Below are positions 1-48,129 of a stretch of 64,000 nucleotides of DNA, one piece after another (the stretch's first letter is position 1; each line of letters begins with the position of its first letter). The stretch comes from Ranitomeya imitator (lineage: Eukaryota). Location of the stretch: assembly GCF_032444005.1 (NCBI RefSeq), contig NC_091288.1, forward strand, positions 201,996,001 to 202,060,000, given 5' to 3'. Under the pieces are notes generated by a model. The model was not told the DNA's origin, did no database searches, and saw nothing but the letters and a program-made list of their open reading frames with translations. A program made the position numbers and the translations under genes.

Positions 1-10
1 CGCTTCTGTA

Positions 11-887: not shown

Positions 888-1242
888 CGCTTCTAAATGT
901 AATGACGTCATTTACACTGTAAAAAGAATTCAATTAGGCTCTAGATCAACTCCACCGACCACCACAAATGGCTCCTGTTAACGGAGAAAGGAGAGTAATG
1001 AACGAGACCCCAGAATGCCGAGATCTGTGCAGCAAGGGGTTAAATAAGTCCCTGAATACACATCAACTCACTGAGCAATGCCCAGATTATTCCTGAGGTT
1101 TTCTCACTATCTCCCTCGTCATCAGACGCAGAGCCCCGGGCGGTGCGAGCAGACACCTCGGGGAGACGGGAGAGGACACCGGAGCAGTGTGGGTGGCTCT
1201 TATAGTGAGGGTGTAGGTGGCTCTTATAGGGAGGGTGTGGGT

Positions 1243-1258
1243 GGCTCTTAGAAGAGCC
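1243..1258 (-). terminator. Histone 3' stem-loop of H2B copy 1, followed by 2 extra AAGAGCC/HDE-like repeats
   Basis: Minus strand GGCTCTTCTAAGAGCC followed by ACCCA. Confidence 0.93.
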
Positions 1259-1288
1259 TTTGGGGTGAGGAGCGGAGCACGGANNNNN

Positions 1289-1850
<562 letters not shown>

Positions 1851-4659: not shown

Positions 4660-5474
4660 GAGCCACCACCTCCTCCCCGCAGAGCTGTATGATCAGTGCC
4701 ACCACCTTCTCCCAACAGAGCTGTATGATCAGTGCCACCACCTCCTCCTCGCAGAGCTGTATGATCAGTGCCACCACCTCCTCCCCGCAGAGCTGTATGA
4801 TCAGAGCAACCACCTTCTCCCCACAGAGCTGTATGATCAGTGCCATCACCCACTCCCCGCAGAGCTGTATGATCAGTGCCACCACCTCCTCGCAGAGCTG
4901 TATGATCAGTGCCACCACCTCCTCCCCACGGAACTGTATGATCAGTGCCACCGCCTCCTCCCCGCAGAGCTGTATGATCAGTGCCACCACCTCCTCCTCG
5001 CAGAGCTGTATGATCAGTGCCACCACCTCCTCCCCGCAGAGCTGTATGATCAGAGCAACCACCTTCTCCCCACAGAGCTGTATGATCAGTGCCATCACCC
5101 ACTCCCCGCAGAGCTGTATGATCAGTGCCACCACCTCCTCGCAGAGCTGTATGATCAGTGCCACCACCTCCTCCCCACGGAACTGTATGATCAGTGCCAC
5201 CGCCTCCTCCCCGCAGAGCTGTATGATCAGTGCCACCACCTCCTCCTCCCTGCAGAGCTGTATGATCAGTGCCACCACCTCCTCCTCCCTGCAGAGCTGT
5301 ATGATCAGTGCCACCACCTCCTCCTCCCCGCAGAGCTGTATGATCAGTGCCACTACCTCCTCCCCGCAGAGCTGTATGATCAGAGCAACCACTTCCTCCC
5401 CAGCAGAGCTATATGATCAGTGCCACCACCTTCTCCCCACAGAGCTGTATGATCAGTGCCACCACCTTCTCCCC
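4660..5474 (+). repeat. Orphan 36-bp minisatellite (22 units) built from the H1 cleavage-site/HDE segment
   Basis: Unit accacctcctccccgcAGAGCTGTAtgatcagtgcc. It starts with gagccaccacctcctccccgcagagctgtatg, identical to the sequence from the 3' arm of the H1 stem-loop onward. Confidence 0.9.
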
Positions 5475-7035: not shown

Positions 7036-7132
7036 GCGGGAAATTCAAAATTCCTACCCGCCCTGTGTGCAGCCAATCTGCAGAGGAAGGGGAGGGGCTA
7101 ACGTTAACCGTTTAGGAACGTGGAGTTCCCGC
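7036..7132. promoter_or_regulatory. Inverted orphan E2F-CCAAT-E2F-like cassette
   Basis: gcgggaaattcaaaa...gccaatc...ggaggggctaac...gttcccgc. Reverse-complement paralog of 793-887 and of the H4 upstream module. Confidence 0.45.
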
Positions 7133-7774: not shown

Positions 7775-7849
7775 GGCTCTGAAAAGAGCCTTTGTGTTGT
7801 GGTCGGTGCCGGGGCAGATCTAAGCTCTCTCCCCACGGATCCGGCGGGC
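7775..7849 (-). pseudogene. Orphan H3 3' tail (ARRIRGERA-stop, 3' UTR, intact stem-loop)
   Basis: Nearly identical to 21200-21274. Stem-loop at 7775-7790, stop at 7820-7822. Truncated at 7849, where it joins the H4 3' flank. Confidence 0.88.
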
Positions 7850-8079
7850 TTGGGAAAACCAGGTTTGTCTTTCTAGGTCAAAATATTGGAAAAGACTCTG
7901 GTCCCAGATCACACACTGCGGGCACATCCCAGAATCTGGATAATGCGGCTTCATTCCTTCGACCGGGAACCCACAGCATTAGTGGCTCAGTAAAGGTTCT
8001 AAACGATATATTAACTTTAAAACCACCAGGAACAAGAGCGCAGGAATAGGAAGGTGCAGCCTCTCACTGAGATGTGGGT

Positions 8080-8095
8080 GGCTCTGAAAAGAGCC
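8080..8095 (-). terminator. Histone 3' stem-loop of H4 copy 1
   Basis: Minus strand GGCTCTTTTCAGAGCC-ACCCA, with purine-rich TGAGAGGCTG downstream. Confidence 0.93.
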
Positions 8096-8125
8096 TTTGG
8101 GTTGTGAGGACAGAAGAGAACACAA

Positions 8126-8640
<515 letters not shown>

Positions 8641-10908: not shown

Positions 10909-10924
10909 GGCTCTTAGAAGAGCC
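10909..10924 (-). terminator. Histone 3' stem-loop of H2A copy 1
   Basis: Minus strand GGCTCTTCTAAGAGCC-ACCCA. Confidence 0.93.
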
Positions 10925-11370: not shown

Positions 11371-11923
11371 CTAAAGACAGAAAATCGTGTGGAGAAGAGA
11401 CTGTGCTGTGTGGCCTTATATAGTCTGCTGCTCCGCCCTCCTCTCCTGTCATTGGATGACTCTGAAGCTGGCCAATGGGGAAGAGTCTTGAGGAACCGCC
11501 AATGAGCTGCCGAGGGCGGAGCTTATTATTGCTCCTTGCTCAAATTAGTTTCTCACCCAATAGAAAACGTTCGCTTTGGACCGAATAGATAAGGGGTGAA
11601 AACAGATATTTGTCTTGGAGCAGAAGGAAGTGCAGAAATATTCTGTTGATTTGTAGTTTGCACTTGTTGAATTTGTGTCTACTATCAGCCATAAATTGCA
11701 CTGACAGTCTGGTGGGTGAGGGGTTAATCCCTGTCAGTGCTTCTCCTCCGCTCCATCTGCACAGGAGGCGGCTCCTCACTCACCCGCTTATTACCCTGTG
11801 CAGATTCCCTGTGGTGTCCGCGCTGATCCTATCACAGCCTGACTGAGACAAGTCTCCTATGTTCTGCCCGGAGCCTGATGTGACGCTGCCGGGTCCCGGG
11901 TGGGGGAAGTCGCCGCTTCTGTA

Positions 11924-12265
11924 TTGTATGATACAATATTGTTCTGCTCCAGGAAGACATCCAGGCCTCTCTTGAACCCCTCGACTGAGTTCGCCATCAC
12001 CACCTCCTCAGGCAAGCAATTCCAGATTCTCACCGCCCTAACAGTAAAGAATCCTCTTCTATGTTGGTGGAAAAACCTTCTCTCCTCCAGACGCAAAGAA
12101 TGCCCCCTTGTGCCCGTGGCCTTGGTATAAACCTTGGTATAAACAGATCCTCAGCGAGATATTTCTATTGTCCCCTTATATACTTATACATGGTTATTAG
12201 ATCGCCCCTCAGTCGTCTTTTTCTAGACTAAATAATCCTAATTTCGCTAATCTATCTGGGTATTG
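11924..12265 (-). mobile_element. CR1 ORF2 3' fragment, copy 2
   Basis: Near-identical to 11-360 (offset 11913). Confidence 0.8.
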
Positions 12266-13161
12266 TAGTTCTCAATACCCAGATAGTGGTAATGTTCTGA
12301 GCAGGGACACTCCGCAATCTTCTACACATGATCGTACATTTCCCATCACAGAGGGATCTGCTGGGAAGGGCAGAATTGGTCTTCCCTGAAATGTCTCTTG
12401 TAGGATACGTCCCTGACCAGTATATCGTCTGCACAGTACTGATTGTGACGGGAAAGGGACGATCTGATCGTCTCCAGGTCAGGCACACGGGCACATCACA
12501 GCATGTGGAGAACACGAATCAGTCTCTATATCTATGAGTGGAAACAGGAGCGAATACTGCACCGCTAACCTGGAAATCTGCAGACTCCTGTGTGGGATGT
12601 AAGAGAGCAATGATCGCTCAACACAAGCAGATTTCCCGATATCGGTCCTGGGAGCACGTGTCATATGAAGACAAAGGACGGAAAAAAGCGGGAACTTTAA
12701 ACTTTTTACCATTGGAAACATTAGCTCCTCCCTCTGCTGATTGGCTGAACACAGGACGGTTAGGGGGGTTTGAATTTCCCGCCGCTTCTAAATGTAATGA
12801 CGTCATTTACACTGTAAAAAGAATTCAATTAGGCTCTAGATCAACTCCACCGACCACCACAAATGGCTCCTGTTAACGGAGAAAGGAGAGTAATGAACGA
12901 GACCCCAGAATGCCGAGATCTGTGCAGCAAGGGGTTAAATAAGTCCCTGAATACACATCAACTCACTGAGCAATGCCCAGATTATTCCTGAGGTTTTCTC
13001 ACCATCTCCCTCGTCATCAGACGCAGAGCCCCGGGCGGTGCGAGCAGACACCTCGGGGAGACGGGAGAGGACACCGGAGCAGTGTGGGTGGCTCTTATAG
13101 TGAGGGTGTAGGTGGCTCTTATAGGGAGGGTGTAGGTGGCTCTTATAGGGAGAGTGTGGGT

Positions 13162-13177
13162 GGCTCTTAGAAGAGCC
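13162..13177 (-). terminator. Stem-loop of H2B copy 2, followed by 3 extra AAGAGCC repeats
   Basis: GGCTCTTCTAAGAGCC; repeats at plus-strand 13090, 13114 and 13138. Confidence 0.93.
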
Positions 13178-13207
13178 TTTGGGGTGAGGAGCGGAGCACG
13201 GANNNNN

Positions 13208-13684
<477 letters not shown>

Positions 13685-14076
13685 TCAGACCGCCGTGCTA
13701 TTGGGTGATGAAGTCATGTGACCAACGGGAACGGGAACGGGAACTGCAGCTGATTGGTGGTTCTCCAACTGATATTTCGCTTTTCAGCACCCTCCATATA
13801 GCGCTGTAAAACACGTATAATGCTGAATACATCTAAATAGTGCTGTGAAGCGCCATATACCGCAGTGCACCCTCATATAGTGCTCTATGTGTTAATGTAG
13901 CTCTGTTTACCCTTCATGTGCTGCAGTATACTCCAATATAGTGCTGCTATTCATCTGTATAGTGCAGAGTGCCCCCATATACTGCAACTTACTGACAAAT
14001 GACTGTGCCACTTCCAGAGCTCGGCCGTCATGGCCCTGCAGGAGGCCAGCGAGGCTTATCTGCTGGGGAGTCTGGG

Positions 14077-16203
14077 GATGTACTAGATTTTCTCGGCACC
14101 ACCATCCGCATGTGGGGTGCTGCTGTAATCCCGTTCATTATCCTCATTTTTCCTCTGCACATTCCCACATCCAGCCAAGTGATCGCGGGGTCCAGTATAC
14201 TCATCAGCATTGCCAATACTTCGATATGTAGCAAAGAAGGAGTGGTGTAAAAATTTGGGGGGCATTTTGAGGGCAACCCAAACGTTGTGCCCCACCAAAA
14301 AATGTCCCGGTTGACCCAAAACATTCTGAAAAAAATTACCACACACTCTTATAGTGTTCCTCTACACACCCTGAGAATTTGTGGTCGACAGACCCAAACC
14401 GGGCTTAGCAGTGACCTTGCGCACCACAGACTTCAATGGGCAGGGTCACTTTGGGGAGTCTCTGCTCAGCCCAGTTTGTGGCTATCATCAACCCCAAATG
14501 TTCAGGGTGTGTAGCTCTAGTGGACCAGTGCTGTAAAAATTTAGGGGGCATTTTGAGATGACCCAAAACATATGCCCCTCCCCACCCCCAAACTTCTGAA
14601 CAAATTACCCGACACTCTTGAATTGTTCCTCTACACACCCTGAACATTTGGGGTCGATGGGCACAAACTAGGCTGAGCAGTGACCCTGCGCGCGATAGGC
14701 TTCCATGGGCAGGGCAGCTTTGGGGGGTAACTGCTCAGCACAGATTGGGGCTATCGACTTCAAATTTTCATAGTGTGTAGAGGAATAATTCATGAGTGTG
14801 GGCTATTTTTTTTCTGAATACCTTGCTCTATATACTGTACACACTGCTCTAGATATTGTACACTGCTCTATATACTGTACACACTGCTCTATATATTGTA
14901 TACTGCTCTATATACTGTACACTGATTTACATACTGTACCCTCTCCTGTATATACTGTACACACTGCTACTGTACACTCTGGTCTATATACTGTGTACTC
15001 TGCTGTATATACTGTACACACTGCTCTATATACTGTACGCTCTGGTCTATAATACTGTACACTGCTGTATATACTGTTCACACTGCTCTATATACTGTAC
15101 ACTGCTCTAAATACTGTACACACTGCTCTATATACTGTATATACTGTATATATACTGTATATATTGCTGTATATATACTGTATATATACTGTATATATTG
15201 CTGTATATACTGTACAACCTGTTGCACAGTCTGTATACACTGCTGTATATACTGCATACTCTGCTCTATATACTGTACACACGGCACTATGCTATACACT
15301 GCTCTATATACTGTACACTCTGGTCTATAAACTGGACACTGCTGTATATACTGTACTCTGCTTTATATACTGTACACACTGTTGTATATACTGTAGACTC
15401 TCCTCTATTATCTGTGACACTTATTACACTGCTGATCTGGGCTGTGCAGATGTGATGTTGTGCACTATATATACTATATACAGCTGTGTTCTCTGTGTAG
15501 ACGCTGGATTTTGTGTCTCCGCTTTTCTCCCAATATTCCCCTTTTGCACAACAGTGGGGGTCACATACATGCATGAATATTTCCGTTTTCTCCCGAGATG
15601 TTCATGTGTTTGGTTGGGGAGTCGCGCTGTGCAGCTGTCGCCTCATCAGAGCTCTTCCCTCCATTACAGGCCGCAGCGGTCACAGCTTCACACTGGGTAA
15701 GACACGATATCAGGCAGGTGATTGCAATCAGCCCCCGATATGGATCATCTACTGATGTGGAACACGTGTCCCCCCAATACTCTGCACATACAGGGTAGAG
15801 TGATATCACAGGTCAGGGAGGTGGCAGTCAGCGGAGGCCGTCGCCTGTGTTACCCTTCTGGGTTCTCAGCAGCTCCAGCTGGTCCCCACATCGTACAATC
15901 AGCTTCCTGTGCGATAGACACTGGAGTAAAGATCCCTGTGATGGTGACAAGAGCCGGGAATAGGAGGAACGAGCTCCCGCAGCAGATTTATCTACCCGGA
16001 CACACAGTGATGTGCAGATCGGGAGGACGGCGGCGATAATCTCCGCAATTTCTAGGCGTTTCCACTAGTGACGGCTACAAACGGTCGGTGGAGATGATGG
16101 AGAAGGAGAAGCGACGGAGGAATCGCGCTCTGCTGTCCGGTGTTAGCCGGTAAAGGGTTTTTATCCCGGGCAGGGAAGCACAAGGGGAGAGCGGAGCTTC
16201 ACT
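14077..16203 (+). repeat. Inverted paralog of the H1 upstream region, copy 2
   Basis: Near-identical to 2164-4290 (offset 11913). Confidence 0.8.
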
Positions 16204-16572
16204 ACCTGCCAGCCCTTATGCCGAAGTGATCAGATTCTATTCTGTGTAATCCGCTCATGTAACCAATATTGGCGGAGGCTGCGGGGAGTTATAGATTTCA
16301 TGTCTTATAAAAGCAGCTCAGCGGGTTATCGATTGTGCAGAGGTGTCAGTATGTGCATGTATATATGTGTATGTACATACCCCATACACCCTTGTATCAT
16401 TTACCAAATAGTACCGTAACAATGAACAGCATCAGCGGTTCCAGCTCCATAATGCAAACAGGGGGCAGCACAATAAGATGGGGGCAAACACCAGTATATG
16501 TCAGGACTCGGGAGACTTAATGTTAGTCAGATAGGAGCTCTGCACTTCCGCAGCCATTTAATCTCATTCAAT

Positions 16573-17387
16573 GAGCCACCACCTCCTCCCCGCAGAGCTG
16601 TATGATCAGTGCCACCACCTTCTCCCAACAGAGCTGTATGATCAGTGCCACCACCTCCTCCTCGCAGAGCTGTATGATCAGTGCCACCACCTCCTCCCCG
16701 CAGAGCTGTATGATCAGAGCAACCACCTTCTCCCCACAGAGCTGTATGATCAGTGCCATCACCCACTCCCCGCAGAGCTGTATGATCAGTGCCACCACCT
16801 CCTCGCAGAGCTGTATGATCAGTGCCACCACCTCCTCCCCACGGAACTGTATGATCAGTGCCACCGCCTCCTCCCCGCAGAGCTGTATGATCAGTGCCAC
16901 CACCTCCTCCTCGCAGAGCTGTATGATCAGTGCCACCACCTCCTCCCCGCAGAGCTGTATGATCAGAGCAACCACCTTCTCCCCACAGAGCTGTATGATC
17001 AGTGCCATCACCCACTCCCCGCAGAGCTGTATGATCAGTGCCACCACCTCCTCGCAGAGCTGTATGATCAGTGCCACCACCTCCTCCCCACGGAACTGTA
17101 TGATCAGTGCCACCGCCTCCTCCCCGCAGAGCTGTATGATCAGTGCCACCACCTCCTCCTCCCTGCAGAGCTGTATGATCAGTGCCACCACCTCCTCCTC
17201 CCTGCAGAGCTGTATGATCAGTGCCACCACCTCCTCCTCCCCGCAGAGCTGTATGATCAGTGCCACTACCTCCTCCCCGCAGAGCTGTATGATCAGAGCA
17301 ACCACTTCCTCCCCAGCAGAGCTATATGATCAGTGCCACCACCTTCTCCCCACAGAGCTGTATGATCAGTGCCACCACCTTCTCCCC
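16573..17387 (+). repeat. Orphan 36-bp HDE minisatellite, copy 2
   Basis: The ORF-track translations of this array are identical to those of 4660-5474. Confidence 0.9.
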
Positions 17388-19687
17388 TTCATTGTCTGTT
17401 CTAGTTATATGGAGATAATGGTCCTTGTATGCAATGTCCAGTAATGATTCCCGAGAGCAGCAGACGCTCCCTGAGGACCCATCTATGCCCAGCAGAGGAC
17501 ACTCATAGCCAGAGACCGGTACCGGGAGTTCCCTCTCCTCACGCTGCAGAACAGCAGAGCGGGCTGGGGACTAGTGACCGGTGTCACCCGCACTCAGAGC
17601 AGCCTGCAGCTGAAGGAGGAATCCCCCCTAACAAGGAATGTGCCAGTGACACCCTGACAGCGGAGAAAGGACAGGCAGAACACGCAGCAGCCGGGACTCT
17701 CCTCGCTGCGAGCTCCGGTACACAGAGGGGGGCAGGAAGTTCCGGGCTCAGGAGACGGGGACATCACCTGCCATGGGGTGTAAGGGGATGATCTGTAGCG
17801 CTGCATCTAATTATTGGGGGAAGCTCATTATCACTTACCAGACGCATTCAGGTGACATTAATGAGCCGCAGGCAGCGAGGCCGCCGAGTACTGTCCTCAA
17901 TGGGGAGCAGCATTATAACAATGAGAATAACTTGCCCCCACTGTGATTTTCTTGTTATACGAATTGACGGTTTACTTTATTTTAATAACACTTGTATTGC
18001 AAATGACAGAGATCATAAAACTTAGATATAACCTGTTTCTTCATATGAAGATTTACATTCACAGAACATTTATTATCTTCCCGTAGAAGATAATGACAAC
18101 AGCTTAGATGGATAAAACCATAAGCAATGGAGAAAGAACACAGAGAAAGAATTCCAAAACCTGTCATTCCTCAGTTGCTGGAGCTGTAGAATGATGGGCT
18201 GCACAGATTTTAGAGGATCATCTCTTCATTGTAATAGCTGAATCATTGGAATAGTGATATCCAGCAGGAGACATATGTCAGGACTAATAGTAACAATGCA
18301 ACAATGAGGCAGACTGAGGTGTGCACTGACTTGCAGAGAAGCAGCAGTAGTCTGAAGAAGCTGACAATTAAGAACAGCTGTGTACAACCATCTCCTATCT
18401 GTAAGCCGCTAGGAAATTAATTGTTAAACACTTATCTGCTTTTGGAGGCAAAAAAAGACGCTAAATGCTCCTGAGTAACCTCATATCTTGTATTTTACTA
18501 ACATGTTTTTCTTTTCCCTTATTTAGGCTATTCAATTTTAGTTACCATATTACATTTCTCCTGTAACTCTGACCTGCTTGGACTGTTGTCTTTTCCTACA
18601 CTTTTATCATATTTGATCCTTTTTCTTACCCTATTAAAATTTATATTTACCGTCCCTCTTTTATTTATGTCTGATATAAAACTGTTTGTGTGTATTGATT
18701 ATACTTTAAAAAACAAAAAAAACTACAAATCGCTCTGAGTTCAGTGGCTTTTTATTCCAGCTCTTGCTCCATGGATCGTCCGATACTTTGTGGTCTCGTA
18801 TTAATTGAAGTTTATGATTCTCACTTTGTTTCTCCAAAGAAAACATTTATTTATTAAATGACTCCACGGTGATTTGGAAGGTGATTACAGGAGATTGCTG
18901 TTGGTGGACTTTATATCACATCACAAGAAGCTGCGGAAACTACAACAAGCGGGAAATTCAAAATTCCTACCCGCCCTGTGTGCAGCCAATCTGCAGAGGA
19001 AGGGGAGGGGCTAACGTTAACCGTTTAGGAACGTGGAGTTCCCGCTGAGTGGCTGATGAATTTTCCGTTTTTTGTCTTTCTGTAGTTTCAGGACGATCAG
19101 ATGTCCGAAAAGTGTTTGTGTGGAGCGATCAATGGTCACTTGTGTCCCATACAGGAGTTTATATATTTCCAGGATCAAGGGAGAAGTATCCGCTTTCTAT
19201 AATAGAAGGTGCAGAACTTTGCGACTATAGTGACTCCATCAGACCAGCAATATTCAGTGCAGGGAATATACAGAAACGAGGTCATGCAGATTAGAAACAA
19301 TCTTAAAATTGGGGTGGGGAGTCTAAAATGCTGATTAATGTTATCTAGGGAAACCTACTATAGAACTGTAAACTCCTGCAGTGAGAAGAATAACAGGAAA
19401 TATCGCAGAGTAGATGGGCGCCCTGTATGGTCACATATGAGCATTCTTGCCGCATCCAGTCCCATCACACATCAATATCTTTGCGGATTATTCTAGTATT
19501 GGTCCTGATCAGGGCGCACAGGGAAGGGGGGATGAGATTATTACATTTCCGCATATATGTATTTACTCCCCCACACACTGCAGACTGAGCCGCGAGTGAC
19601 CCAGAGACCAGATGTTACCGAGCACAAGTGATCCCTCCGGGCATAATTATATGTGAGGAATGAGCTCGTCTTGAGGGAGGATTTGGT

Positions 19688-19762
19688 GGCTCTGAAAAGA
19701 GCCTTTGTGTTGTGGTCGGTGCCGGGGCAGATCTAAGCTCTCTCCCCACGGATCCGGCGGGC
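19688..19762 (-). pseudogene. Orphan H3 3' tail with stem-loop, copy 2
   Basis: Same as 7775-7849; stem-loop at 19688-19703. Confidence 0.88.
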
Positions 19763-19992
19763 TTGGGAAAACCAGGTTTGTCTTTCTAGGTCAAAATATT
19801 GGAAAAGACTCTGGTCCCAGATCACACACTGCGGGCACATCCCAGAATCTGGATAATGCGGCTTCATTCCTTCGACCGGGAACCCACAGCATTAGTGGCT
19901 CAGTAAAGGTTCTAAACGATATATTAACTTTAAAACCACCAGGAACAAGAGCGCAGGAATAGGAAGGTGCAGCCTCTCACTGAGATGTGGGT

Positions 19993-20008
19993 GGCTCTGA
20001 AAAGAGCC
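19993..20008 (-). terminator. Stem-loop of H4 copy 2
   Basis: GGCTCTTTTCAGAGCC-ACCCA. Confidence 0.93.
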
Positions 20009-20038
20009 TTTGGGTTGTGAGGACAGAAGAGAACACAA

Positions 20039-20560
<522 letters not shown>

Positions 20561-21244: not shown

Positions 21245-21844
<600 letters not shown>

Positions 21845-22059
21845 CTAATCCCGCCCCTGAAGTCCCCGCCTCTTCCGTGATGCGTCTGTCCTCAGATCAC
21901 TCATTTGCCGCTTGCTGGAGCAGCTGATGTATTTGCGTTCAAATGTCCCCGTGTATAGCGCTGTACAGTGCAGCTCCCGCAATATCGACAGATCACACCA
22001 ACCCCCCATCCTGAGACTGCGCCCAGCATCAGTTATATTACAAACATTAGAAGTCCGAG

Positions 22060-22671
22060 AACTAATCATACAGCTCTGCGGGGAGGAGGCGGTGGCACTG
22101 ATCATACAGCTCTGCGGGGAGGAGGTGGTGGCTCTGATCATACAGCTCTGTGGGGAGAAGGTGGTGGCACTGATCAAACAGCTCTGCTGGGGAGGAGGTG
22201 GTGGCTCTGATCATACAGCTCTGTGGGGAGAGGTGGTGGCACTGATCATACAGCTCTGCTGGGGAGGAGGTGGTTGCTCTGATCATACAGCTCTGCGGGG
22301 AGGAGGTAGTGGCACTGATCATACAGCTCTGCGGGGAGGAGGTAGTGGCTCTGATCATACAGCTCTGCGGGGAGAATGTGATGGCTCTGATCATACAGCT
22401 CTGCTGGGGAGGAGGTGGTGGCTCTGATCATACAGCTCTGTGGGGAGAAGGTGGTTGCTCTGATCATACAGCTCTGCGGGGAGGAGGTGGTGGCACTGAT
22501 CATACAGCCCTGTGGGGAGGAGGTAGTGGCACTGATCATACAGCTCTGCGGGGAGGAGGTGGTGGCACTGATCATACAGTTCTGCGGGGAGTGGGTGATG
22601 GCACTGATCATACAGCTCTGCTGGGAGGAGGTGTTGGCACTGATCATACAGCTCTGCGGGGAGGAGGTGGT
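22060..22671 (-). repeat. ~17 x 36-bp minisatellite starting directly after the H1 stem-loop; each unit carries AGAGCTGTA (HDE)
   Basis: Minus strand ...ggctcttataagagcc|accacctcctccccgcAGAGCTGTAtgatcagtgcc|aacacc... repeated. Confidence 0.92.
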
Positions 22672-22687
22672 GGCTCTTATAAGAGCC
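22672..22687 (-). terminator. Stem-loop of H1
   Basis: GGCTCTTATAAGAGCC, 28 nt after the stop codon. Confidence 0.93.
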
Positions 22688-22715
22688 TTTGTGGTATCAG
22701 AACAGGGGCTGCAGC

Positions 22716-23351
22716 TTATTTCTTAGCCGCGGGCTTCTTGGCTTTCGCAGCCTTCTTAGCCGGACTCTTGGCGGGTTTGGCCGCCTTCTTAGCCGGACTC
22801 TTCGTCACCTTCTTGGGCTTGGGAGCGGCTTTCGGCTTTTTGGGGCTCTTGGCCGCTTTCTTGGCAGCTGCGGGCTTCTTGGCCTTTTTCGGGCTCTTCT
22901 TGGCCGCGGTCGGAGCCTTCTTGGGCTTCTTCGGAGATTTGGCGGCTTTCTTGGCAGCAGCGGGTTTCTTAGGTTTGGCCGCAGCTGCTGGCTTCGTCTT
23001 GGCCACTTTGTCCTTCGTCTCCTGCTTCTTGTTCAGCTTGAAGGACCCGGAGGCGCCGCTGCCCTTCACCTGGAGGAGGGCGCCCTTGGTGACCAGAGAC
23101 TTGACGGCCAGCTTCAGGCGGCTGTTGTTCTTCTCTACATCGTATCCTCCGGCAGACAGAGCCTTCTTCAGGGCGGCCAGAGACACCCCGCTGCGCTCCT
23201 TGGAGGCGGACACGGCTTTCACGATCAGCTCGGAGACGCTGGGGCCGGAGGGTTTATTGCTCTTCTTGGCAGCAGATTTCTTCGGCTGCTTCTTGGATTT
23301 GGCGGCCGGTTCTGCGGGAGGGGGAGCGGCGGCTGGCGCGGTCTCTGCCAT
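22716..23351 (-). CDS. H1: Histone H1 (somatic type, 211 aa; alternative adjacent ATG at 23354)
   Basis: [15 protein letters not shown]..., globular domain [29 protein letters not shown]...[10 protein letters not shown], Lys/Ala/Pro-rich tail. CATATAA, two CCAAT boxes and a GC box upstream. Confidence 0.97.
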
Positions 23352-23534
23352 CATGTGCTGCGGAAAAACAAAATGAAAATATTTCCTGATAGGAAGGAAA
23401 ACACTGAGGCCGGAGCTGGAGGCGCCTGTTATATGTACAGGCTTACTGCGCACTGATTGGCTGCTGAGCTGCACCGTTCTGAGCTTCTATTGGCTGACAC
23501 TGGACATAAACCCCGCCTCCTCCCAGCTGAGTCC

Positions 23535-26221
23535 GGGTGAAGCACCGCTCTCTCCTTGTGCTTCCCTGCCCGGGATAAAAGCCCTTTACCGGCTAACACC
23601 GGACAGCAGAGCGCGCTTCCTCCATCGCCTCTCCTTCTCCAACATCTCCACCGGCCATTTGTAGCCGTCACTAGCAGAGATGCCGGGAAAGAGCGGAGAA
23701 CAAATCCCGGGATCATCGCCGCCGTCCTCCCGATCTGCACCTCACTGTGTACCGGGGAGATAAATCTGCTGCGGGAGCTCGTTCCTCCTATTCCCGGCTC
23801 TTGTCACCATCACAGGGATCTTTACTCCAATGTCTATCGTACAGGGAGCTGATTGTACGATGTGGGGACGAGCTGGAGCTGCTGAGAACCCAGAAGGGTA
23901 ACACAGGCGACGGCCTCCGCTGACTGCCACCTCCCTGACCTGTGGTGTCACTGTACCCCGTATGTGCAGAGGATTGGGGGGACACGTGTTCCACATCAGT
24001 AGATGATCCACATCGGTGGCTGAGTGCAATCACCTGCCTGATATCTTGTCTTAGTGGTGGGAAAGAGCTCTGATGAGGCGACAGCTGCACAGTGCGACTC
24101 CCCAACCAAACACATGAACATCTCAGGGGAGAAAACTGAAATATTAACGGATGTATATGACCCCCACTATTATGCAAAAGGGGAATATTGGGAGAAGAGC
24201 GGAGACACAAAATCCAGCGTCTACACAGAGAACACAGCTGTATATAGTATATATAGTGCACAGCATCACATCTGCACAGCCCAGATCAGCAGTGTAATAA
24301 GTGCCACTGATAATAGAGGAGAGGGTACAGTATATACAGCAGAGTGTACAGTATATAGAGCAGAGTACACAGTATATAGAGCAGAGTGTACAGTATATAG
24401 ACCAGAGTGTACAGTATACAGAGCAGTGTGTGCAGTATATACAGCAGAGTGTACAGTATATAGAGCAGTGTATAGTATATACAGCAGTGTACAGTATATA
24501 GAGCAGTGTATAGTATAGTATAGTGCGGTGTGTACAGTATATAGAGCGGTGTGTGCAGTATATACAGCAGAGTACACTGTATGTAGACCAGAGTGTACAG
24601 TATATACAGCAGAGTACACAGTATATAGACCAGAGTGTACAGTATACAGAGCAGTGTGTGCAGTATATGCAGCAGAGTACACAGTATATAGAGCAGTGTA
24701 CAGTATATACAGCAGTGTACAGTATTTACAGCAATGTACAGTAAATAGACCAGAGTGTACAGTATATAGAGCAGTGTACAGTAGTGCGGTGTGTGCAGTA
24801 TATAGAGCAGAGTATACAGTATATACAGCAGAGTACAGTATATAGAGCAGAGTGCACAGTATAAAGAGCTGTGTGTACAGTATATACAGGAGAGGGTACA
24901 GTACATAGAGCAGTGTGTACAGTATATAGAGCACTGTACACAGTATATACAGCAGTGTGTACAGTATGTAGAGGAGAGTGTAGAGTATGTACAGCAGTGT
25001 GTACAGTATATAGATCATTGTGTGCATTATATAGAGCAAAGCGTTCAGTATATAGAGCAGTGTGCAGTATAGTGCGGTGTATATAGAGCAGTGTATACAG
25101 TATACTATTATTATTTTTTTATATAGCACCATTGATTCCATGGTGCTGTACATGAGCGGTGACCTCCCAAAGTGTAGAGGAACAATTCAAGAGTGTGGGG
25201 TACTTATTTCAGAAATCGGGGGGGGGGGGGGGGGGGTTAACGGCCCGGGGGGGCATTTTTTTGAGGGGCATAACTTGTGGGCAAGGTCAATTTGGGGGGT
25301 CTCAGCTCAACCCGGTTTTGGGCTATCAACCCCAAATTTTCAGGGTGTGTAGAGTACCCCTAGCGAACCAATAGTGTAAAAAATTGAGGGTGGCACTTTG
25401 AGGGCACCCCAAAACTAATGCCCCCCCCCAAAAAAAAAAAAAATGCCCCCCTCCCATTAACCTAAAAATTCTGAAAAAAAAAATAGCCCAACTAATGAAT
25501 TGTTCCTCTACACACTATGAAAATTTGACGTCGATAGCCCCAATCTGGGCTGAGCAGTTACCCCCCAAAGCTGCCCTGCCCATTGAAGCCTATCGCGCGC
25601 AGGGTCACTGCCCAGCCTGGTTTGTGCCTACCGACCCCACATTTTCAGGGTGTGTAGAGGAACAATTCAAGAGTGTCGGGTAATTTGTTCAGAAGTTTGG
25701 GCGTCGGGAAGGGGGGCATATTTTTGGGGTGATCTCAAAATGCCCCCCACATTTTTGCAGCACTGGTCCACTAGAGCTATGGGTACGCTACACACCCTGA
25801 AAATGTGTGGTTGATAGCCACAAACAGGGCTGAGCAGAGACTCCCCAAAGTGACCCTGCCCATTGAAGTCTATGGTGCGCAAGGTCACTGCTCAGCCCGA
25901 TTTGGGTCTGTCGACCACAAATTCTCAGGGTGTGTAGAGGAACACTTTAAGAGTGTGTGGTAATTTTTTTCAGAATGTTTTGGGTCAACCGGGGCATTTT
26001 TTGGTGGGGCACAACGTTTGGGTTGCCCTCAAAAGCCCCCCAAAGTTTTACACCACACCTCCTTTGCTACATATCGAAGTATTGGCAATGCTGATGAGTA
26101 TACTGGACCCCGCGATCACTTGGCTGGATGTGGGAATGTGCAGAGGAAAAATGAGGATAATGAACGGGATTACAGCAGCACCCCACATGCGGATGGTGGT
26201 GCCGAGAAAATCTAGTACATC
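23535..26221 (-). repeat. H1 upstream block (satellite plus palindromic MITE-like units), inverted relative to 14077-16203
   Basis: Reverse-complement similarity. Includes the satellite at 24325-25105 and repeated ctacacaccctg...cagggtgtgtag palindromic units. Confidence 0.75.
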
Positions 26222-31850: not shown

Positions 31851-32788
31851 TCTCAATAGAATTGTAGTTCTCAATACCCAGATAGTGGTAATGTTCTGAG
31901 CAGGGACACTCCGCAATCTTCTACACATGATCGTACATTTCCCATCACAGAGGGATCTGCTGGGAAGGGCAGAATTGGTCTTCCCTGAAATGTCTCTTGT
32001 AGGATACGTCCCTGACCAGTATATCGTCTGCACAGTACTGATTGTGACGGGAAAGGGACGATCTGATCGTCTCCAGGTCAGGCACACGGGCACATCACAG
32101 CATGTGGAGAACACGAATCAGTCTCTATATCCATGAGTGGAAACAGGAGCGAATACTGCACCGCTAACCTGGAAATCTGCAGACTCCTGTGTGGGATGTA
32201 AGAGAGCAATGATCGCTCAACAAGCAGATTTCCCGATATCGGTCCTGGGAGCACGTGTCATATGAAGACAAAGGACGGAAAAAAGCGGGAACTTTAAACT
32301 TTTTACCATTGGAAACATTAGCTCCTCCCTCTGCTGATTGGCTGAACACAGGACGGTTAGGGGGGTTTGAATTTCCCGCCGCTTCTAAATGTAATGACGT
32401 CATTTACACTGTAAAAAGAATTCAATTAGGCTCTAGATCAACTCCACCGACCACCACAAATGGCTCCTGTTAACGGAGAAAGGAGAGTAATGAACGAGAC
32501 CCCAGAATGCCGAGATCTGTGCAGCAAGGGGTTAAATAAGTCCCTGAATACACATCAACTCACTGAGCAATGCCCAGATTATTCCTGAGGTTTTCTCACC
32601 ATCTCCCTCGTCATCAGACGCAGAGCCCCGGGCGGTGCGAGCAGACACCTCGGGGAGACGGGAGAGGACACCGGAGCAGTGTGGGTGGCTCTTATAGTGA
32701 GGGTGTAGGTGGCTCTTGTAGTGAGGGTGGCTCTTGTAGTGAGGGTGGCTCTTGTAGTGAGGGTGGCTCTTGTAGTGAGGGTGTGGGT

Positions 32789-32804
32789 GGCTCTTAGAAG
32801 AGCC
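32789..32804 (-). terminator. Stem-loop of H2B copy 3, followed by 5 extra AAGAGCC repeats
   Basis: Repeats at plus-strand 32687, 32711, 32729, 32747 and 32765. Confidence 0.93.
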
Positions 32805-32834
32805 TTTGGGGTGAGGAGCGGAGCACGGANNNNN

Positions 32835-33311
<477 letters not shown>

Positions 33312-35336
33312 TCAGACCGCCGTGCTATTGGGTGATGATGTCATGTGACCAACGGGAACGTCAGACGCTCCGCCCACTGCAGCTGATTGGTGGTTCTCCA
33401 ACTGATATTTCGCTTTTCAGCACCCTCCATATAGCGCTGTAAAACACGTATAATGCTGAATACATCTAAATAGTGCTGTGAAGCGCCATATACCGCAGTG
33501 CACCCTCATATAGTGCTCTATGTGTTAATGTAGCTCTGTTTACCCTTCATGTGCTGCAGTATACTCCAATATAGTGCTGCTATTCATCTGTATAGTGCAG
33601 AGTGCCCCCATATACTGCAACTTACTGACAAATGACTGTGCCACTTCCAGAGCTCGGCCGTCATGGCCCTGCAGGAGGCCAGCGAGGCTTATCTGCTGGG
33701 GAGTCTGGGGATGTACTAGATTTTCTCGGCACCACCATCCGCATGTGGGGTGCTGCTGTAATCCCGTTCATTATCCTCATTTTTCCTCTGCACATTCCCA
33801 CATCCAGCCAAGTGATCGCGGGGTCCAGTATACTCATCAGCATTGCCAATACTTCGATATGTAGCAAAGAAGGAGTGGTGTAAAAATTTGGGGGGCATTT
33901 TGAGGGCAACCCAAACGTTGTGCCCCACCAAAAAATGTCCCGGTTGACCCAAAACATTCTGAAAAAAATTACCACACACTCTTATAGTGTTCCTCTACAC
34001 ACCCTGAGAATTTGTGGTCGACAGACCCAAACCGGGCTTAGCAGTGACCTTGCGCACCACAGACTTCAATGGGCAGGGTCACTTTGGGGAGTCTCTGCTC
34101 AGCCCAGTTTGTGGCTATCATCAACCCCAAATGTTCAGGGTGTGTAGCTCTAGTGGACCAGTGCTGTAAAAATTTAGGGGGCATTTTGAGATGACCCAAA
34201 ACATATGCCCCTCCCCACCCCCAAACTTCTGAACAAATTACCCGACACTCTTGAATTGTTCCTCTACACACCCTGAACATTTGGGGTCGATGGGCACAAA
34301 CTAGGCTGAGCAGTGACCCTGCGCGCGATAGGCTTCCATGGGCAGGGCAGCTTTGGGGGGTAACTGCTCAGCACAGATTGGGGCTATCGACTTCAAATTT
34401 TCATAGTGTGTAGAGGAATAATTCATGAGTGTGGGCTATTTTTTTTCTGAATACCTTGCTCTATATACTGTACACACTGCTCTAGATATTGTACACTGCT
34501 CTATATACTGTACACACTGCTCTATATATTGTATACTGCTCTATATACTGTACACTGATTTACATACTGTACCCTCTCCTGTATATACTGTACACACTGC
34601 TACTGTACACTCTGGTCTATATACTGTGTACTCTGCTGTATATACTGTACACACTGCTCTATATACTGTACGCTCTGGTCTATAATACTGTACACTGCTG
34701 TATATACTGTTCACACTGCTCTATATACTGTACACTGCTCTAAATACTGTACACACTGCTCTATATACTGTATATACTGTATATATACTGTATATATTGC
34801 TGTATATGTACTGTATATATACTGTATATATTGCTGTATATACTGTACAATCTGTTGCACAGTCTGTATACACTGCTGTATATACTGCATACTCTGCTCT
34901 ATATACTGTACACACGGCACTATGCTATACACTGCTCTATATACTGTACACTCTGGTCTATAAACTGGACACTGCTGTATATACTGTACTCTGCTTTATA
35001 TACTGTACACACTGTTGTATATACTGTAGACTCTCCTCTATTATCTGTGACACTTATTACACTGCTGATCTGGGCTGTGCAGATGTGATGCTGTGCACTA
35101 TATATACTATATACAGCTGTGTTCTCTGTGTAGACGCTGGATTTTGTGTCTCCGCTTTTCTCCCAATATTCCCCTTTTGCACAATAGTGGGGGTCACATA
35201 CATGCATGAATATTTCAGTTTTCTCCCGAGATGTTCATGTGTTTGGTTGGGGAGTCGCGCTGTGCAGCTGTCGCCTCATCAGAGCTCTTCCCTCCATTAC
35301 AGGCCGCAGCGGTCACAGCTTCACACTGGGTAAGAC

Positions 35337-38098
35337 CAGTGGCGTAGGAAGGGGGGTGCGGGGGGGGGGCGGTCCGCCCCGGGCGGCACAATGCTGGGGG
35401 CGGCCGGCGCTGCAGAAGAAGATAAAAAAAAAAAAAAAAAAAAAGACGCCCCTTTAAATCTTCGGGCGGCGCCGTCCGCCGCCACGACCAGGGCCAGCTC
35501 CCCCCACCCCCGGGTCCCGCCCCCGCCCCCGCCCCCGCCCCCGCTCTATACTCACCTCTCCTGGTTCCTGCGGCGCCGGCAGCTGCAGCCTCCTCTGACT
35601 CTGCGACGTCTCAGAGCAGAGGGCGCGATGACGTCACTACTGTGCGCGCCGCTCTGCCTCTCTGTCCTGAGCGTCGCAGAGCCGGAGAGACGCTGACTGC
35701 ACCGGACCTGCGCTGGGAACGGGAGAGGTGAGGATTTTACTTTTTTTTTTTTTTCTTTATTTCTGACTGTCTGGGGCTGGGGCAATGCTGGAGACCATGG
35801 GGCAGAATGCTGGACACACTGGGGCAATACAGGAGACCATGGGGCAGATTGCTGGACACACTGGGGCAATACTGGAGACCATGGGGCAGATTGCTGGACA
35901 CACTGGGGCAATACAGGAGACCATGGGGCAGATTGCTGGACACACTGGGGCAATACAGGAGACCATGGGGCAGATTGCTGGACACACTGGGGCAATACAG
36001 GAGACTATGGGGCAGATTGCTGGACACACTGGGGCAATACAGGAGACCATGGGGCAGATTGCTGGACACACTGGGGCAATACAGGACACCATGGGGCAGA
36101 TTGCTGGACACACTGGGGCAATACTGGAGACCATGGGGCAGAATGCTGGACACACTGGGGCAATACTGGAGACCATGGGGCAGAATGCTGGACACACTGG
36201 GGCAGTACAGGAGACTATGGGGCAGAATGCTGGACACTCTGAATACTGGAGACCATGGGGCAGATCTCAGGACACATTGAGGCAATGCTGGAGACCCTGG
36301 GGCAGACTTCTGGACATACTGGGGCAATACTGGAGACCATGGGGCAGATTGCTGGACACACCGGGGCAATACTGGAGACCATGGGGCAGAATGCTGGACA
36401 CACTGGGGCAATACAGGAGACCATGGGGCAGATTGCTGGACACACTGGGGCAGTACAGGAGACTATGGGGCAGAATGCTGGACACACTGGGGCAATACTG
36501 GAGACCCTGGGGCAGATTGCTGGACACACTGGGGCAATACTGGAGACCATGGGGCAGATTGCTGGACACACTGGGGCAATACAGGAGACCATGGGGCAGA
36601 TTGCTGGACACACTGGGGCAGTACAGGAGACTATGGGGCAGAATGCTGGACACACTGGGGCAATACAGGAGACTATGGGGCAGAATGCTGGACACACTGG
36701 GGCAATACTGGAGACCCTGGGGCAGATTTCTGGACACATTGAGGCAATGCTGGAGACCCTGGGGCAGACTTCTGGACACACTGGGGCAATGCTGGACACT
36801 GGGGCAGATTGCTGGACACACTGGGGGTAATATACTGGACACACTGGGGCAATGCTGGACACTGGGGCAGACTGCTGGACACACTGGGGAAAGGCTGGAC
36901 ACTGGGGCAGATTGCTGGACACACTGAGGGCAGATTGCTGGACACACTGGGGGTAATATGCTGGACATACTGGGGCAGATTGCTGGACACACTGGGGGTA
37001 ATATGCTGGACACACTGGGGCAGATTGCTGGACAACATGGGGGTAATATGCTGGACACACTGGGGCAGATTGCTGGACAACATGGGGGTAATATGCTGGA
37101 CACACTGGGGGCAGGACTTGAGGCATGGGCAGAATGTAGATACGGGGCATGATTGGAGACACGGGGCAGGATTGGATCATGGGGCAGGACGGATACGATG
37201 GAGGCTGGTGGGGCAGGATGGGGAGATCATATGGGGTAGAATGGATACTCATGAGGGCAGGATACGACAACATATGGCTGGAGCCAGGAATGAGATAAAC
37301 GGGGCCAGGGTGGGGAATATTATTACCATAGGGGATAATTAAGGGATATTGTTACTGCAGTGATGTATTTATTTTATTTTTTGAGTATACTGTTTTAAAT
37401 GGGGGGGCTGTCCTGTTACTGTGCAGAGTGACACTATATCACCTTTTTTTCTTCATGTGGTGTAATGTAGAAGTTGTGAAAAATTAAGTAATGTGTTCTG
37501 CAAGCGGAGCTCGAGATAACTGTGTTATTTCCTGCAGAAACGAGTCCTGGCTGGAAGGAATGATGGCGGTCTGTGCTGGATAAAAGATGAAGGACTTCAC
37601 CTAGAGACGTCACTGGTGAGTCAGTGTTACCTATACACTGACACTATACACTGTATACTATATAGAGGTCCTGTGTATAATGTCACCAGTGATCTCTGTA
37701 TTACCTCTACACAGACACTGCATACTAAGTACAGATCTCCTGTGAATACTGGCACTTATGGTGATAGTATTGTGGTTTTTTTTTTTATTACTGATCAGTA
37801 TTGTAGTATTCAGTCACTATGTGGTGGTAATATGTGGTCTGGAAATGGTGCGGTGGTATTTGTCCCTTGTATGTAGTATTATTCGGTCACTATGTGGCCT
37901 GGTCATGGTGTGGTGGTATTAAGTCACAGGTGTGGCATGTGGGGGTGACACCATTAGGCCCAGTTTAAGTTCTACAAAACAGGAAAACCATTTTTGGTAA
38001 CCTTTGTGTGTATTGAGCTGGAGGGGGGGTGGGATGGGGGGGGGGGGCGCCAAACTCGGGAACAGCCCCGGGCGGCAAAAGCTCTAGCTACGCCTCTG
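35337..38098. mobile_element. Non-autonomous hAT-type DNA transposon (2762 bp)
   Basis: Termini CAGTGGCGTAG / CTACGCCTCTG (10/11 inverted). 8-bp TSD GGTAAGAC at 35329-35336 and 38099-38106. Empty sites with a single GGTAAGAC at 3783-3790 and 15696-15703. No transposase ORF. Confidence 0.9.
35775..37100. repeat. ~42-bp minisatellite inside the hAT element
   Basis: Unit gctggacacactggggcaatacaggagaccatggggcagatt, degenerating rightwards. Confidence 0.9.
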
Positions 38099-40935: not shown

Positions 40936-40956
40936 AGTTGTCTATGCATCTCCTGT

Positions 40957-41606: not shown

Positions 41607-41632
41607 CACCGGCTCGCTCTCCTGCTCTCGCC

Positions 41633-48118: not shown

Positions 48119-48129
48119 GATTGATTTTC

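What the first reader, a model, noticed from the sequence alone, without database searches (positions are those of the whole stretch)
22060..22687. H1 3'-processing signal amplified into a ~17-copy array of U7 snRNA binding sites
Seen: immediately after the H1 stem-loop the 36-bp segment ACCACCtcctccccgcAGAGCTGTAtgatcagtgcc repeats ~17 times. The first AGAGCTGTA lies 16 nt from the stem, the normal HDE position. Known: the vertebrate U7 5' end contains UUACAGCUCUUU, so each unit offers 9 contiguous Watson-Crick pairs, a better match than the HDEs of the H2A, H2B, H3 or H4 genes here. Strong U7 pairing is known to reduce SLBP dependence of cleavage. Inference: a fail-safe multi-site cleavage/termination module protecting the H3 promoter ~250 bp downstream, or a local U7 concentrator. 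I am not aware of a described HDE minisatellite but could not search for one.
Basis: partly seen in the sequence, partly recalled or inferred. Interest (0 to 1): 0.8.

Follow-up and report, generated by a model that had tools for sequence, protein, structure and literature searches.

The report
Minisatellite grown from H1 cutting signal
Behind a poison-frog histone H1 gene, the 36-base signal that marks where the H1 message is cut is copied head-to-tail 17 times; the origin is clear and seems undescribed, but the extra copies look like a tolerated by-product of DNA slippage, not a proven safety device.

Summary
A 36-bp x 17.0 array (22061-22674, minus strand) starts directly after the H1 stem-loop (22672-22687). 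The first AGAGCTGTA lies 16 nt after the stem. 14 of 17 units keep this 9-mer, which pairs with human/mouse U7 (9 Watson-Crick pairs, -14.0 kcal/mol). That beats every other HDE in the window.

The origin reading is supported: each unit is stem 3'-arm-like AG(A/T)GCC + ACCACC + spacer + HDE.

The functional reading (fail-safe cleavage, H3 promoter shield, U7 concentrator) is not supported:
- The same array occurs twice more (4662-5474, 16575-17387; 22 units each) with no H1 gene or stem-loop.
- The U7-pairing core is no better kept than the adjacent TGATCAG.
- H2B genes carry 2, 3 or 5 copies of their own flank+HDE, while H2A shows the unamplified direct repeat. This points to slippage between stem arm and HDE.
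- DNA runs of two other coded organisms hold the unit at very high depth.
- The H3-to-H4 tandem pair has no array.

RNA contigs show H1 is expressed, and one contig reads 41 nt into the array.

This scan has already reported the same 36-bp satellite behind H1 genes elsewhere in this genome (40 to about 890 copies). The frog's own U7 sequence was not obtained.

The parts
22716..23354 (-). Histone H1 coding sequence (212 aa plus stop), intact
   Evidence: Translation. Best protein hits are Ranitomeya variabilis H1.01-like (96%) and R. imitator (99% over 79%). It is covered by RNA-run contigs.
22672..22687 (-). H1 3' stem-loop GGCUCU-UAUA-AGAGCC, the only stem-loop in or next to the array
   Evidence: Pattern search. 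Rfam Histone3 match at 29.9 bits, E 1.9e-6, the only match in 22000-22760.
22647..22655 (-). First AGAGCTGTA, the likely working HDE of H1, 16 nt after the stem
   Evidence: The spacing is comparable to H4 (15 nt), H2A and H2B (18 nt) in the same window.
22061..22674 (-). 36-bp x 17 array of [AG(A/T)GCC-like arm remnant + ACCACC + C-rich spacer + AGAGCTGTA + TGATC]; 217-bp higher-order period
   Evidence: TRF. Unit alignment and conservation.
21245..21870 (-). Histone H3 gene (CDS 21245-21655) and its promoter (TATA about 21712-21719, CCAAT about 21736-21740, GC boxes to about 21868), downstream of the array in the same orientation
   Evidence: ORF list and sequence.
4662..5474 (+). 'Ghost' copy of the same array: 22 units, no H1 gene and no stem-loop. 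It is preceded by 370 bp of unique sequence (4290-4659) and then by the H1 upstream flank (3412-4289, 91% identical to 23537-24400)
16575..17387 (+). Second ghost array, identical to 4662-5474, inside the 11.9-kb tandem duplicate
   Evidence: Identical over 860 bp. The duplicates are 99% identical overall.
1187..1250 (-). H2B 3' end: flank+HDE unit (ACCYACAC-CCTCMCTAT-AAGAGCC) present twice at a 24-nt period after the stem-loop (1243-1258)
13082..13169 (-). H2B 3' end in the near-identical duplicate: three HDE copies
32678..32795 (-). Third H2B 3' end: five HDE copies at 18- and 24-nt periods

Best explanation
The array is a minisatellite. It belongs to a high-copy 36-bp satellite family of this dendrobatid genome and was born from the H1 3'-processing signal.

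Origin (inferred from anatomy). A histone 3' end carries a built-in short direct repeat. The stem's 3' arm (A)AGAGCC and the HDE (A)AGAGC both complement GCUCUU-type sequence. Replication slippage or unequal exchange between such repeats duplicated the segment running from the stem's 3' arm to just past the HDE. Further unequal exchange then expanded and reshuffled it.

Present state (inferred). Unit 1 is the working HDE of H1. Most H1 mRNA ends at the stem-loop. The other 16 units are passengers. On RNA that reads past the first site they could pair with U7, and perhaps allow inefficient cleavage without SLBP. That would be a side effect, not a selected design.

Shown here: the anatomy, the U7 complementarity with mammalian U7, the gene-less copies, the parallel H2B amplification, the high copy number, and RNA that enters the array.
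Inferred: the slippage origin, neutrality, and any U7 binding.
For: 1. The unit contains both a stem-arm remnant with flank (AGAGCC/AGTGCC + ACCACC) and the HDE at the working spacing. Unit 1 equals the array consensus.
2. H2A shows the unamplified state: AAGAGCC in the arm and AAGAGCC in the HDE, 24 nt apart. H2B, with the same flank, carries 2, 3 and 5 HDE copies at exactly that period. The count differs even between two 11.9-kb duplicates that are 99% identical.
3. Two ghost arrays persist with 22 units and no H1 gene, stem-loop or H3.
4. Ghost units 3-9 equal units 10-16 exactly, and TRF finds 217- and 249-bp higher-order periods. These are signatures of unequal exchange.
5. The core is no better conserved than the non-pairing TGATCAG. 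Cores are broken in units 3, 5 and 14.
6. In DNA runs of two other coded organisms, summed word depth on the units is 1,600-29,000 against 6-2,000 on H1.
7. The window holds many other minisatellites with 20-, 21-, 33-, 42- and 52-bp units.
8. In RNA run X5 the H1 contig stops at the stem-loop (22687) joined to adapter sequence. In run X1 a 735-nt contig continues 41 nt past the stem.
Against: - The 3' half of the unit, which includes the U7-pairing core, has fewer variant cells than the C-rich half (3/153 against 21/306, p = 0.026; all units p = 2e-4). This could reflect constraint.
- 33 of 39 units keep a 9-bp match that is stronger than the real HDEs of the core histone genes here.
- Two histone classes amplifying exactly their processing signal could also be read as selection.
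- RNA libraries hold array words at depths comparable with H1, although DNA carry-over of a high-copy repeat could explain that.
- Neutrality is argued from pattern and was not measured.
Confidence: 0.68

Rival explanations
1. Fail-safe processing and termination module. RNA polymerase II that escapes cleavage at the stem-loop meets 16 more U7 sites. U7 snRNP cleaves at one of them without SLBP, and the 5'-3' exonuclease then terminates transcription before the H3 promoter.
For: - Nine contiguous pairs and -14.0 kcal/mol per unit with mammalian U7, stronger than the other HDEs here.
- H1, the array and H3 lie in tandem orientation, with the H3 promoter 195-345 bp beyond the array.
- An RNA contig enters the array.
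Against: - Ghost arrays have no gene to terminate and no H3 to protect.
- The H3-to-H4 tandem pair manages without an array.
- The core is not preferentially conserved, and units 3 and 5 are already defective.
- -14.0 kcal/mol is weaker than the H2a-614 benchmark at -16.9, which itself is cleaved poorly without SLBP.
- Unchecked scan notes report arrays of hundreds of units elsewhere, far beyond any fail-safe need.
Confidence: 0.12
2. U7 platform or sponge. Array transcripts, from H1 read-through or from the ghost loci, bind many U7 snRNPs. This would either concentrate U7 at the histone locus body or titrate a scarce snRNP.
For: - There are 52 intact U7-complementary cores in the three arrays of this 64-kb window, and the unit is high-copy in DNA.
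- Array words are present in RNA libraries.
- U7 is scarce, at 1e3 to 2e4 molecules per cell, and in human cells it acts through repeated HDE-like motifs in LTR12 elements (PMC11417402).
Against: - There is no evidence of binding.
- RNA runs hold only 0.03-0.12 of the array words, against 0.6-0.83 of the H1 words.
- DNA carry-over of a high-copy repeat could give the observed RNA depth.
- The unit fails the 15-nt LTR12 motif test (10 of 15 matches).
- Conservation does not single out the core.
Confidence: 0.08
3. DNA-level role. The G-rich/C-rich repeat would act as a boundary or upstream element for H3, as a protein-binding array (the invariant TGATCAG), or as a recombination hotspot that homogenises the histone cluster.
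For: - TGATCAG is the most invariant part of the unit and does not pair with U7.
- The array lies about 200 bp upstream of the H3 GC boxes.
- The clusters show recent duplication and rearrangement around the arrays.
Against: No factor is known. The ghost arrays have different neighbours. The homogeneity can come from recent expansion alone.
Confidence: 0.07
4. Assembly artefact: a collapsed or invented repeat.
For: Tandem repeats are error-prone in assemblies, and the two ghost arrays are identical.
Against: Independent DNA runs, including two other coded organisms, hold contigs of the unit. One of them joins H1, the stem-loop and the first unit with 6 differences in 623 nt (run X24). An RNA contig spans the same junction (run X1).
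Confidence: 0.02

Closest known systems
Canonical histone 3'-processing signal (stem-loop + HDE read by SLBP and U7 snRNP)
   Same: Unit 1 has the stem-loop, an ACC-type flank and a purine-rich core complementary to the U7 5' end at the usual distance. This matches the description in PMC5435866.
   Different: Known genes have one HDE. Here the segment is repeated 17 times, and units 2-17 have no stem-loop. Two unrelated vertebrate H1 contigs fetched here have a single HDE and no repeat (L001 and L002).
Human HDE-like motifs in HERV1/LTR12 repeats, repressed by U7 snRNA (Plewka et al. 2024, PMC11417402)
   Same: U7-complementary motifs sit in repeated DNA, several per element, outside the histone processing context.
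   Different: The LTR12 motif is 15 nt long (AAGAGCTGTAACACT, at most 2 mismatches), dispersed by a retroelement, and acts on transcription through NF-Y. The frog unit matches only 10 of 15 positions, is a head-to-tail array, and derives from the histone gene's own 3' end.
Newt (Notophthalmus) histone clusters embedded in satellite DNA, with read-through transcription on lampbrush loops (Diaz et al. 1981; Gall et al. 1981; from my own knowledge and the reference list of PMC2114352)
   Same: Amphibian histone genes are followed by tandem satellite DNA that transcription can enter.
   Different: To my knowledge, newt satellite 1 is an unrelated repeat of about 220 bp, not derived from the processing signal, and it carries no U7 site.
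Xenopus rDNA spacer 60/81-bp repeats and spacer promoters; mouse rDNA Sal-box terminator repeats (from my own knowledge)
   Same: A gene's own control signal is amplified into a tandem array in the adjacent spacer.
   Different: Those are Pol I signals with demonstrated enhancer or terminator function. No function is shown here.
Ordinary vertebrate minisatellites
   Same: Unit of 10-100 bp, GC-rich with strand asymmetry, variable copy number, higher-order duplications, and many neighbouring arrays.
   Different: The seed sequence is identifiable as an RNA-processing signal, and a working copy forms the first unit.

Membership tests
Histone downstream element (working U7-dependent processing signal) | Lies a fixed short distance downstream of a histone stem-loop and cleavage site | tested here: not met
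   Met for unit 1 only (16 nt after the stem). Units 2-17 and all ghost units have no stem-loop: there is one pattern match and one Rfam match in the region.
Histone downstream element (working U7-dependent processing signal) | Purine-rich core complementary to the 5' end of U7 snRNA | tested here: met
   AGAGCUGUA pairs with UACAGCUCU of human/mouse U7: 9 Watson-Crick pairs, -14.0 kcal/mol, in 14 of 17 units. The frog U7 itself was not available.
Histone downstream element (working U7-dependent processing signal) | U7 snRNP binds and cleavage occurs upstream of it | not testable with these tools
   The only data are contig-level RNA data. One H1 contig ends at the stem-loop and one runs 41 nt into the array.
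Minisatellite / satellite DNA | Head-to-tail units of 10-100 bp with high similarity | tested here: met
   36 bp x 17.0, 89% matches.
Minisatellite / satellite DNA | Copy number and unit order vary between loci, with signs of unequal exchange | tested here: met
   17 against 22 units. There are 217- and 249-bp higher-order periods, and ghost units 3-9 equal units 10-16.
Minisatellite / satellite DNA | Occurs at several loci independently of a particular gene, and is abundant in the genome | tested here: met
   Two gene-less arrays lie in the window. Summed DNA word depth on the units is 1,600-29,000 against 6-2,000 on H1 in two other coded organisms.
U7-regulated HDE-like motif of human LTR12 elements | 15-nt match to AAGAGCTGTAACACT with at most 2 mismatches | tested here: not met
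   The unit's CAGAGCTGTATGATC matches 10 of 15 positions (5 mismatches). This was compared by eye against the motif given in PMC11417402.
Fail-safe tandem terminator | Array present wherever a downstream promoter needs shielding, and absent where there is nothing to terminate | tested here: not met
   The H3-to-H4 tandem pair has no array. The ghost arrays have no upstream gene with a stem-loop and no downstream H3.

The most novel reading that the evidence does not exclude
The amplified H1 processing signal is used. Read-through or ghost-locus transcripts carrying tens of U7-complementary sites would recruit or titrate U7 snRNP at the histone locus. That would give back-up cleavage and termination, or set the local U7 concentration. 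It would be a satellite DNA whose repeat unit is a functional snRNP-binding site derived from the gene's own 3' end.
Probability: 0.15. Interest if true: 0.8.

Novelty: new variant of a known kind. Interest (0 to 1): 0.42.

Why it matters
The value lies in the origin. This is a clear case of a tandem repeat family seeded by an RNA-processing signal, with the working copy still serving as its first unit. The same window also holds an unamplified state (H2A) and small intermediate states (H2B). Together these suggest a general reason why histone 3' ends are prone to such growth: the stem's 3' arm and the HDE form a built-in direct repeat.

If the copies did bind U7, the locus would be a natural experiment on U7 dosage, on cleavage without SLBP, and on how histone locus bodies gather processing factors. 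As it stands the array is best treated as a tolerated by-product. For annotators, it should not be counted as 17 processing sites.

Tried and rejected
- Frog U7 sequence. No U7 gene lies in the window (Rfam gathering search). Papers giving Xenopus U7 are not held, or show it only in a figure (PMC5054213). I therefore used human/mouse U7 from PMC7026596.
- H1 3' flanks of related frogs. The look-up of encoding contigs returned no DNA for the Ranitomeya variabilis, R. imitator and Phyllobates terribilis H1 genes because the files are too large. Two Logan contigs of unidentified, more distant species show a single HDE and no array. They say little about when the array arose.
- Reads on the whole array. 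I did not lay reads on it, because read laying states that it turns away long repeats. Only the H1 gene plus two units was laid. Phased cleavage in distal units and transcription beyond the array therefore stay untested.
- ORFs through the arrays are repeat artefacts and were dismissed.
- RNA fold. A fold of the H1 3' end plus three units is not unusually stable (z = -1.2), so an RNA-structure reading was dropped.
- Chance. A chance origin of the U7 match was rejected: 53 occurrences against 0.65 expected, and the unit inherits the motif from the HDE position.
- Literature. Searches for HDE repeats, histone read-through with tandem repeats, and Ranitomeya satellites found no prior description.

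Full report
WHAT IS THERE

The window is a frog replication-dependent histone cluster. An intact 212-aa H1 gene lies on the minus strand at 22716-23354. Its best protein matches are Ranitomeya variabilis (96%) and R. imitator (99% over 79% of the length). The DNA is therefore from a dendrobatid poison frog.

The gene ends in a histone stem-loop GGCTCT-TATA-AGAGCC at 22672-22687. This stem-loop matches Rfam Histone3 at 29.9 bits, under the gathering score of 34, and it is the only match in 22000-22760.

Directly after the stem, Tandem Repeats Finder reports a 36-bp unit repeated 17.0 times at 22061-22674. The copies match at 89%, and a 217-bp higher-order period is also present. Unit 1 reads CCACCACC-TCCTCCCCGC-AGAGCTGTA-TGATCAGTG. 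The AGAGCTGTA starts 16 nt after the stem, against 15 nt in H4 and 18 nt in H2A and H2B of the same window.

U7 COMPLEMENTARITY

Human and mouse U7 begin (C/A)AGUGUUACAGCUCUUUUAG (PMC7026596). Against the first 20 nt of mouse U7:
- the unit gives 9 contiguous Watson-Crick pairs and -14.0 kcal/mol;
- the in-window HDEs give -13.4 (H2B), -11.8 (H2A), -11.7 (H4) and -6.8 (H3), with 4-6 contiguous pairs;
- the mouse H2a-614 HDE, used as a benchmark, gives -16.9.

I could not obtain a frog U7. None is in the window, and the papers with Xenopus U7 are not held or show it only in a figure. Marz et al. state that only the UCUUU box is universally conserved (PMC5054213). Five of the nine pairs (CUGUA with UACAG) therefore rest on an untested assumption. 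One indirect point in favour: the H4 HDE here (GAGAGGCUG) also extends into the CAG of that region.

ORIGIN

Eight of the 17 units read AGAGCC or AGAGCA before the ACCACC-type flank (AGAGCC ACCACC in the typical case). That is the stem's 3' arm plus its flank. The other units read AGTGCC. The unit is therefore the segment from the stem's 3' arm to 12 nt past the HDE.

The same window shows how such arrays start. In H2A, the arm AAGAGCC and the HDE AAGAGCC form a 7-nt direct repeat 24 nt apart, unamplified. In H2B, which has the same flank, the HDE recurs 2, 3 and 5 times at exactly that 24-nt period; the third copy also has an 18-nt derivative. The count differs between the two 11.9-kb duplicates, which are otherwise 99% identical.

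The arm and the HDE resemble each other because both complement GCUCUU-type sequence. Histone 3' ends therefore carry a built-in slippage substrate. This step is inference, but two gene classes and three copy-number states in one window support it.

EVIDENCE ABOUT FUNCTION

1. Gene-less arrays. The same array occurs twice more on the plus strand, at 4662-5474 and 16575-17387. Each has 22 units, and the two are identical to each other. Upstream of each lies the H1 upstream flank, 91% identical to 23537-24400. The H1 promoter-proximal region, coding sequence and stem-loop are replaced by 370 bp of unique sequence, and the distal flank is unrelated and holds no H3. The array thus persists, at greater length, where there is nothing to process or to shield.

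2. Conservation within the unit, over all 39 units.
   - The 9-nt core has 8 variant cells of 351.
   - TGATCAG, which does not pair with U7, has 1 of 273.
   - The C-rich half has 55 of 702.
   - By variable sites, the core has 5 of 9, the C-rich half 11 of 18, and TGATCAG 1 of 7.
- The 3' half of the unit is more uniform than the 5' half, but the U7-pairing core is not singled out.
   - In the H1-linked array the broken cores are in units 3, 5 and 14, so there is no gradient from the gene.

3. Turnover. Ghost units 3-9 equal units 10-16 exactly, and both arrays have higher-order periods.

4. Other tandem pairs. H3 to H4 lie in tandem, 850 bp from stem-loop to ATG, and have no array.

5. Abundance. 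In DNA runs of two other coded organisms, the two units that were laid collect a summed word depth of 1,600-29,000, against 6-2,000 on H1. One contig there joins H1, the stem-loop and the first unit with 6 differences in 623 nt. The unit is therefore a high-copy family shared with close relatives.

6. Repeat-rich surroundings. The window holds many other minisatellites.

RNA

RNA runs hold 0.6-0.83 of the H1 words but only 0.03-0.12 of the array words.

In run X5, a 709-nt H1 contig ends at 22687, the first base of the stem, joined to Illumina adapter sequence. I read this as the most 3' priming site on molecules that end at the stem-loop; that reading is inference.

In run X1, a 735-nt contig (22631-23365) runs through the stem-loop and the first HDE, 41 nt into the array. 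The junction occurs once per H1 gene. By my own estimate DNA carry-over is therefore an unlikely source, although no silent control stretch was laid to measure it. RNA extending past the first site probably exists, as any pre-mRNA must.

Array contigs in RNA runs have depths similar to H1. For a repeat this abundant, DNA carry-over cannot be excluded, and no silent control stretch could be laid. I did not lay the whole array, because the tool states that it turns away long repeats. Phased cleavage therefore remains untested.

COMPARISON WITH WHAT IS KNOWN

Literature searches found no description of an amplified HDE.

The nearest known case of U7-complementary motifs in repeated DNA is the human LTR12 HDE-like motif, through which U7 represses transcription (PMC11417402). 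The frog unit matches only 10 of its 15 positions. It is also tandem rather than dispersed, so it is not a member of that class.

Mammalian pre-mRNAs with a strong U7 duplex can be cleaved without SLBP, at lower efficiency (PMC5435866). Back-up cleavage is therefore possible in principle, but at -14.0 kcal/mol the unit is weaker than the H2a-614 benchmark.

Newt histone clusters embedded in satellite DNA, and the amplified promoter and terminator pieces in rDNA spacers, are analogies that I cite from my own knowledge.

EARLIER NOTES OF THIS SCAN

The same 36-bp satellite behind H1 genes has been reported repeatedly elsewhere in this genome, with 40 to about 890 copies. Follow-up readers likewise favoured a by-product repeat. 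These are unchecked AI notes. My own DNA-depth result agrees with high copy number, and the X1 contig agrees with one note that transcription enters the array.

This window adds four things:
- the smallest array, at 17 units;
- the gene-less ghost copies;
- the H2A/H2B series, which suggests the mechanism of origin;
- the within-unit conservation test.

VERDICT

The origin as an amplified H1 3'-processing signal is well supported. The proposed fail-safe or U7-concentrator function is not supported, though it is not excluded (about 0.15-0.2 taken together). The finding is a new variant of a known kind: a minisatellite seeded by an RNA-processing signal. Interest is moderate.

Noticed in passing
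window 4290-4659 and 16203-16572: In the two ghost loci, the H1 promoter-proximal region, coding sequence and stem-loop are replaced by 370 bp with no other copy in the window. This segment carries CCAAT and TATAAAAG-like motifs about 270 bp upstream of the 22-unit array, in the array's sense orientation. Whether it drives array transcription is unknown.
   Followed up: partly
window 1187-1258, 13082-13177, 32678-32804: H2B 3' ends carry 2, 3 and 5 copies of their own flank+HDE at a 24- or 18-nt period. H2A (10909-10924) has the same arm/HDE direct repeat unamplified. The copy number differs between duplicates that are 99% identical.
   Followed up: yes
window 7775-7790 and 19688-19703: Orphan H3-type stem-loops with H3-like flanks lie about 290 bp downstream of the H4 stem-loops, with no H3 coding sequence upstream. 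They look like remnants of a rearrangement that removed H3 and H1 from the 11.9-kb unit.
   Followed up: no
window 1-8637 versus 11914-20555: An 11.9-kb tandem duplication at 98-99% identity carries H2B, a 21-mer array, a ghost 36-mer array, H4 and H2A. The ghost arrays are identical between the copies, while the H2B HDE array differs by one unit.
   Followed up: partly
window 2911-3508, 14824-15421, 24313-25071, 34457-35054, 38696-40938, 35777-37087, 41271-41614, 42293-43650, 48128-48506: The window holds many other minisatellites: a 21-mer ATAGAGCAGTGTGTACAGTAT family with up to about 110 copies, a 42-mer x 31, a 33-mer x 10, a 52-mer x 26 and a 20-mer x 19. The region is generally prone to tandem arrays.
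   Followed up: no
window 22638-22646 and the same position in every unit: TGATCAG, directly 3' of the U7-complementary core, is the most invariant part of the unit (1 variant in 273 cells). It has no complement in the mammalian U7 5' end. This is unexplained.
   Followed up: partly
window 22672-22687: The H1 stem-loop has the loop UAUA, against UUUC or UCUA in the other histone genes here, and the flank ACCACC instead of ACCCAC. It scores below the Rfam gathering threshold (29.9 against 34 bits).
   Followed up: partly
window about 41917-42258 and 43753-44178: ORF fragments resemble nucleoside-diphosphate kinase (for example ...[33 protein letters not shown]...). This suggests that the histone cluster ends near 41 kb and an NME-type gene follows.
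   Followed up: no
window 1040-1669, 12935-13588, 32532-33215: The central parts of all three H2B coding sequences are runs of N (masked). They were left as they are.
   Followed up: no
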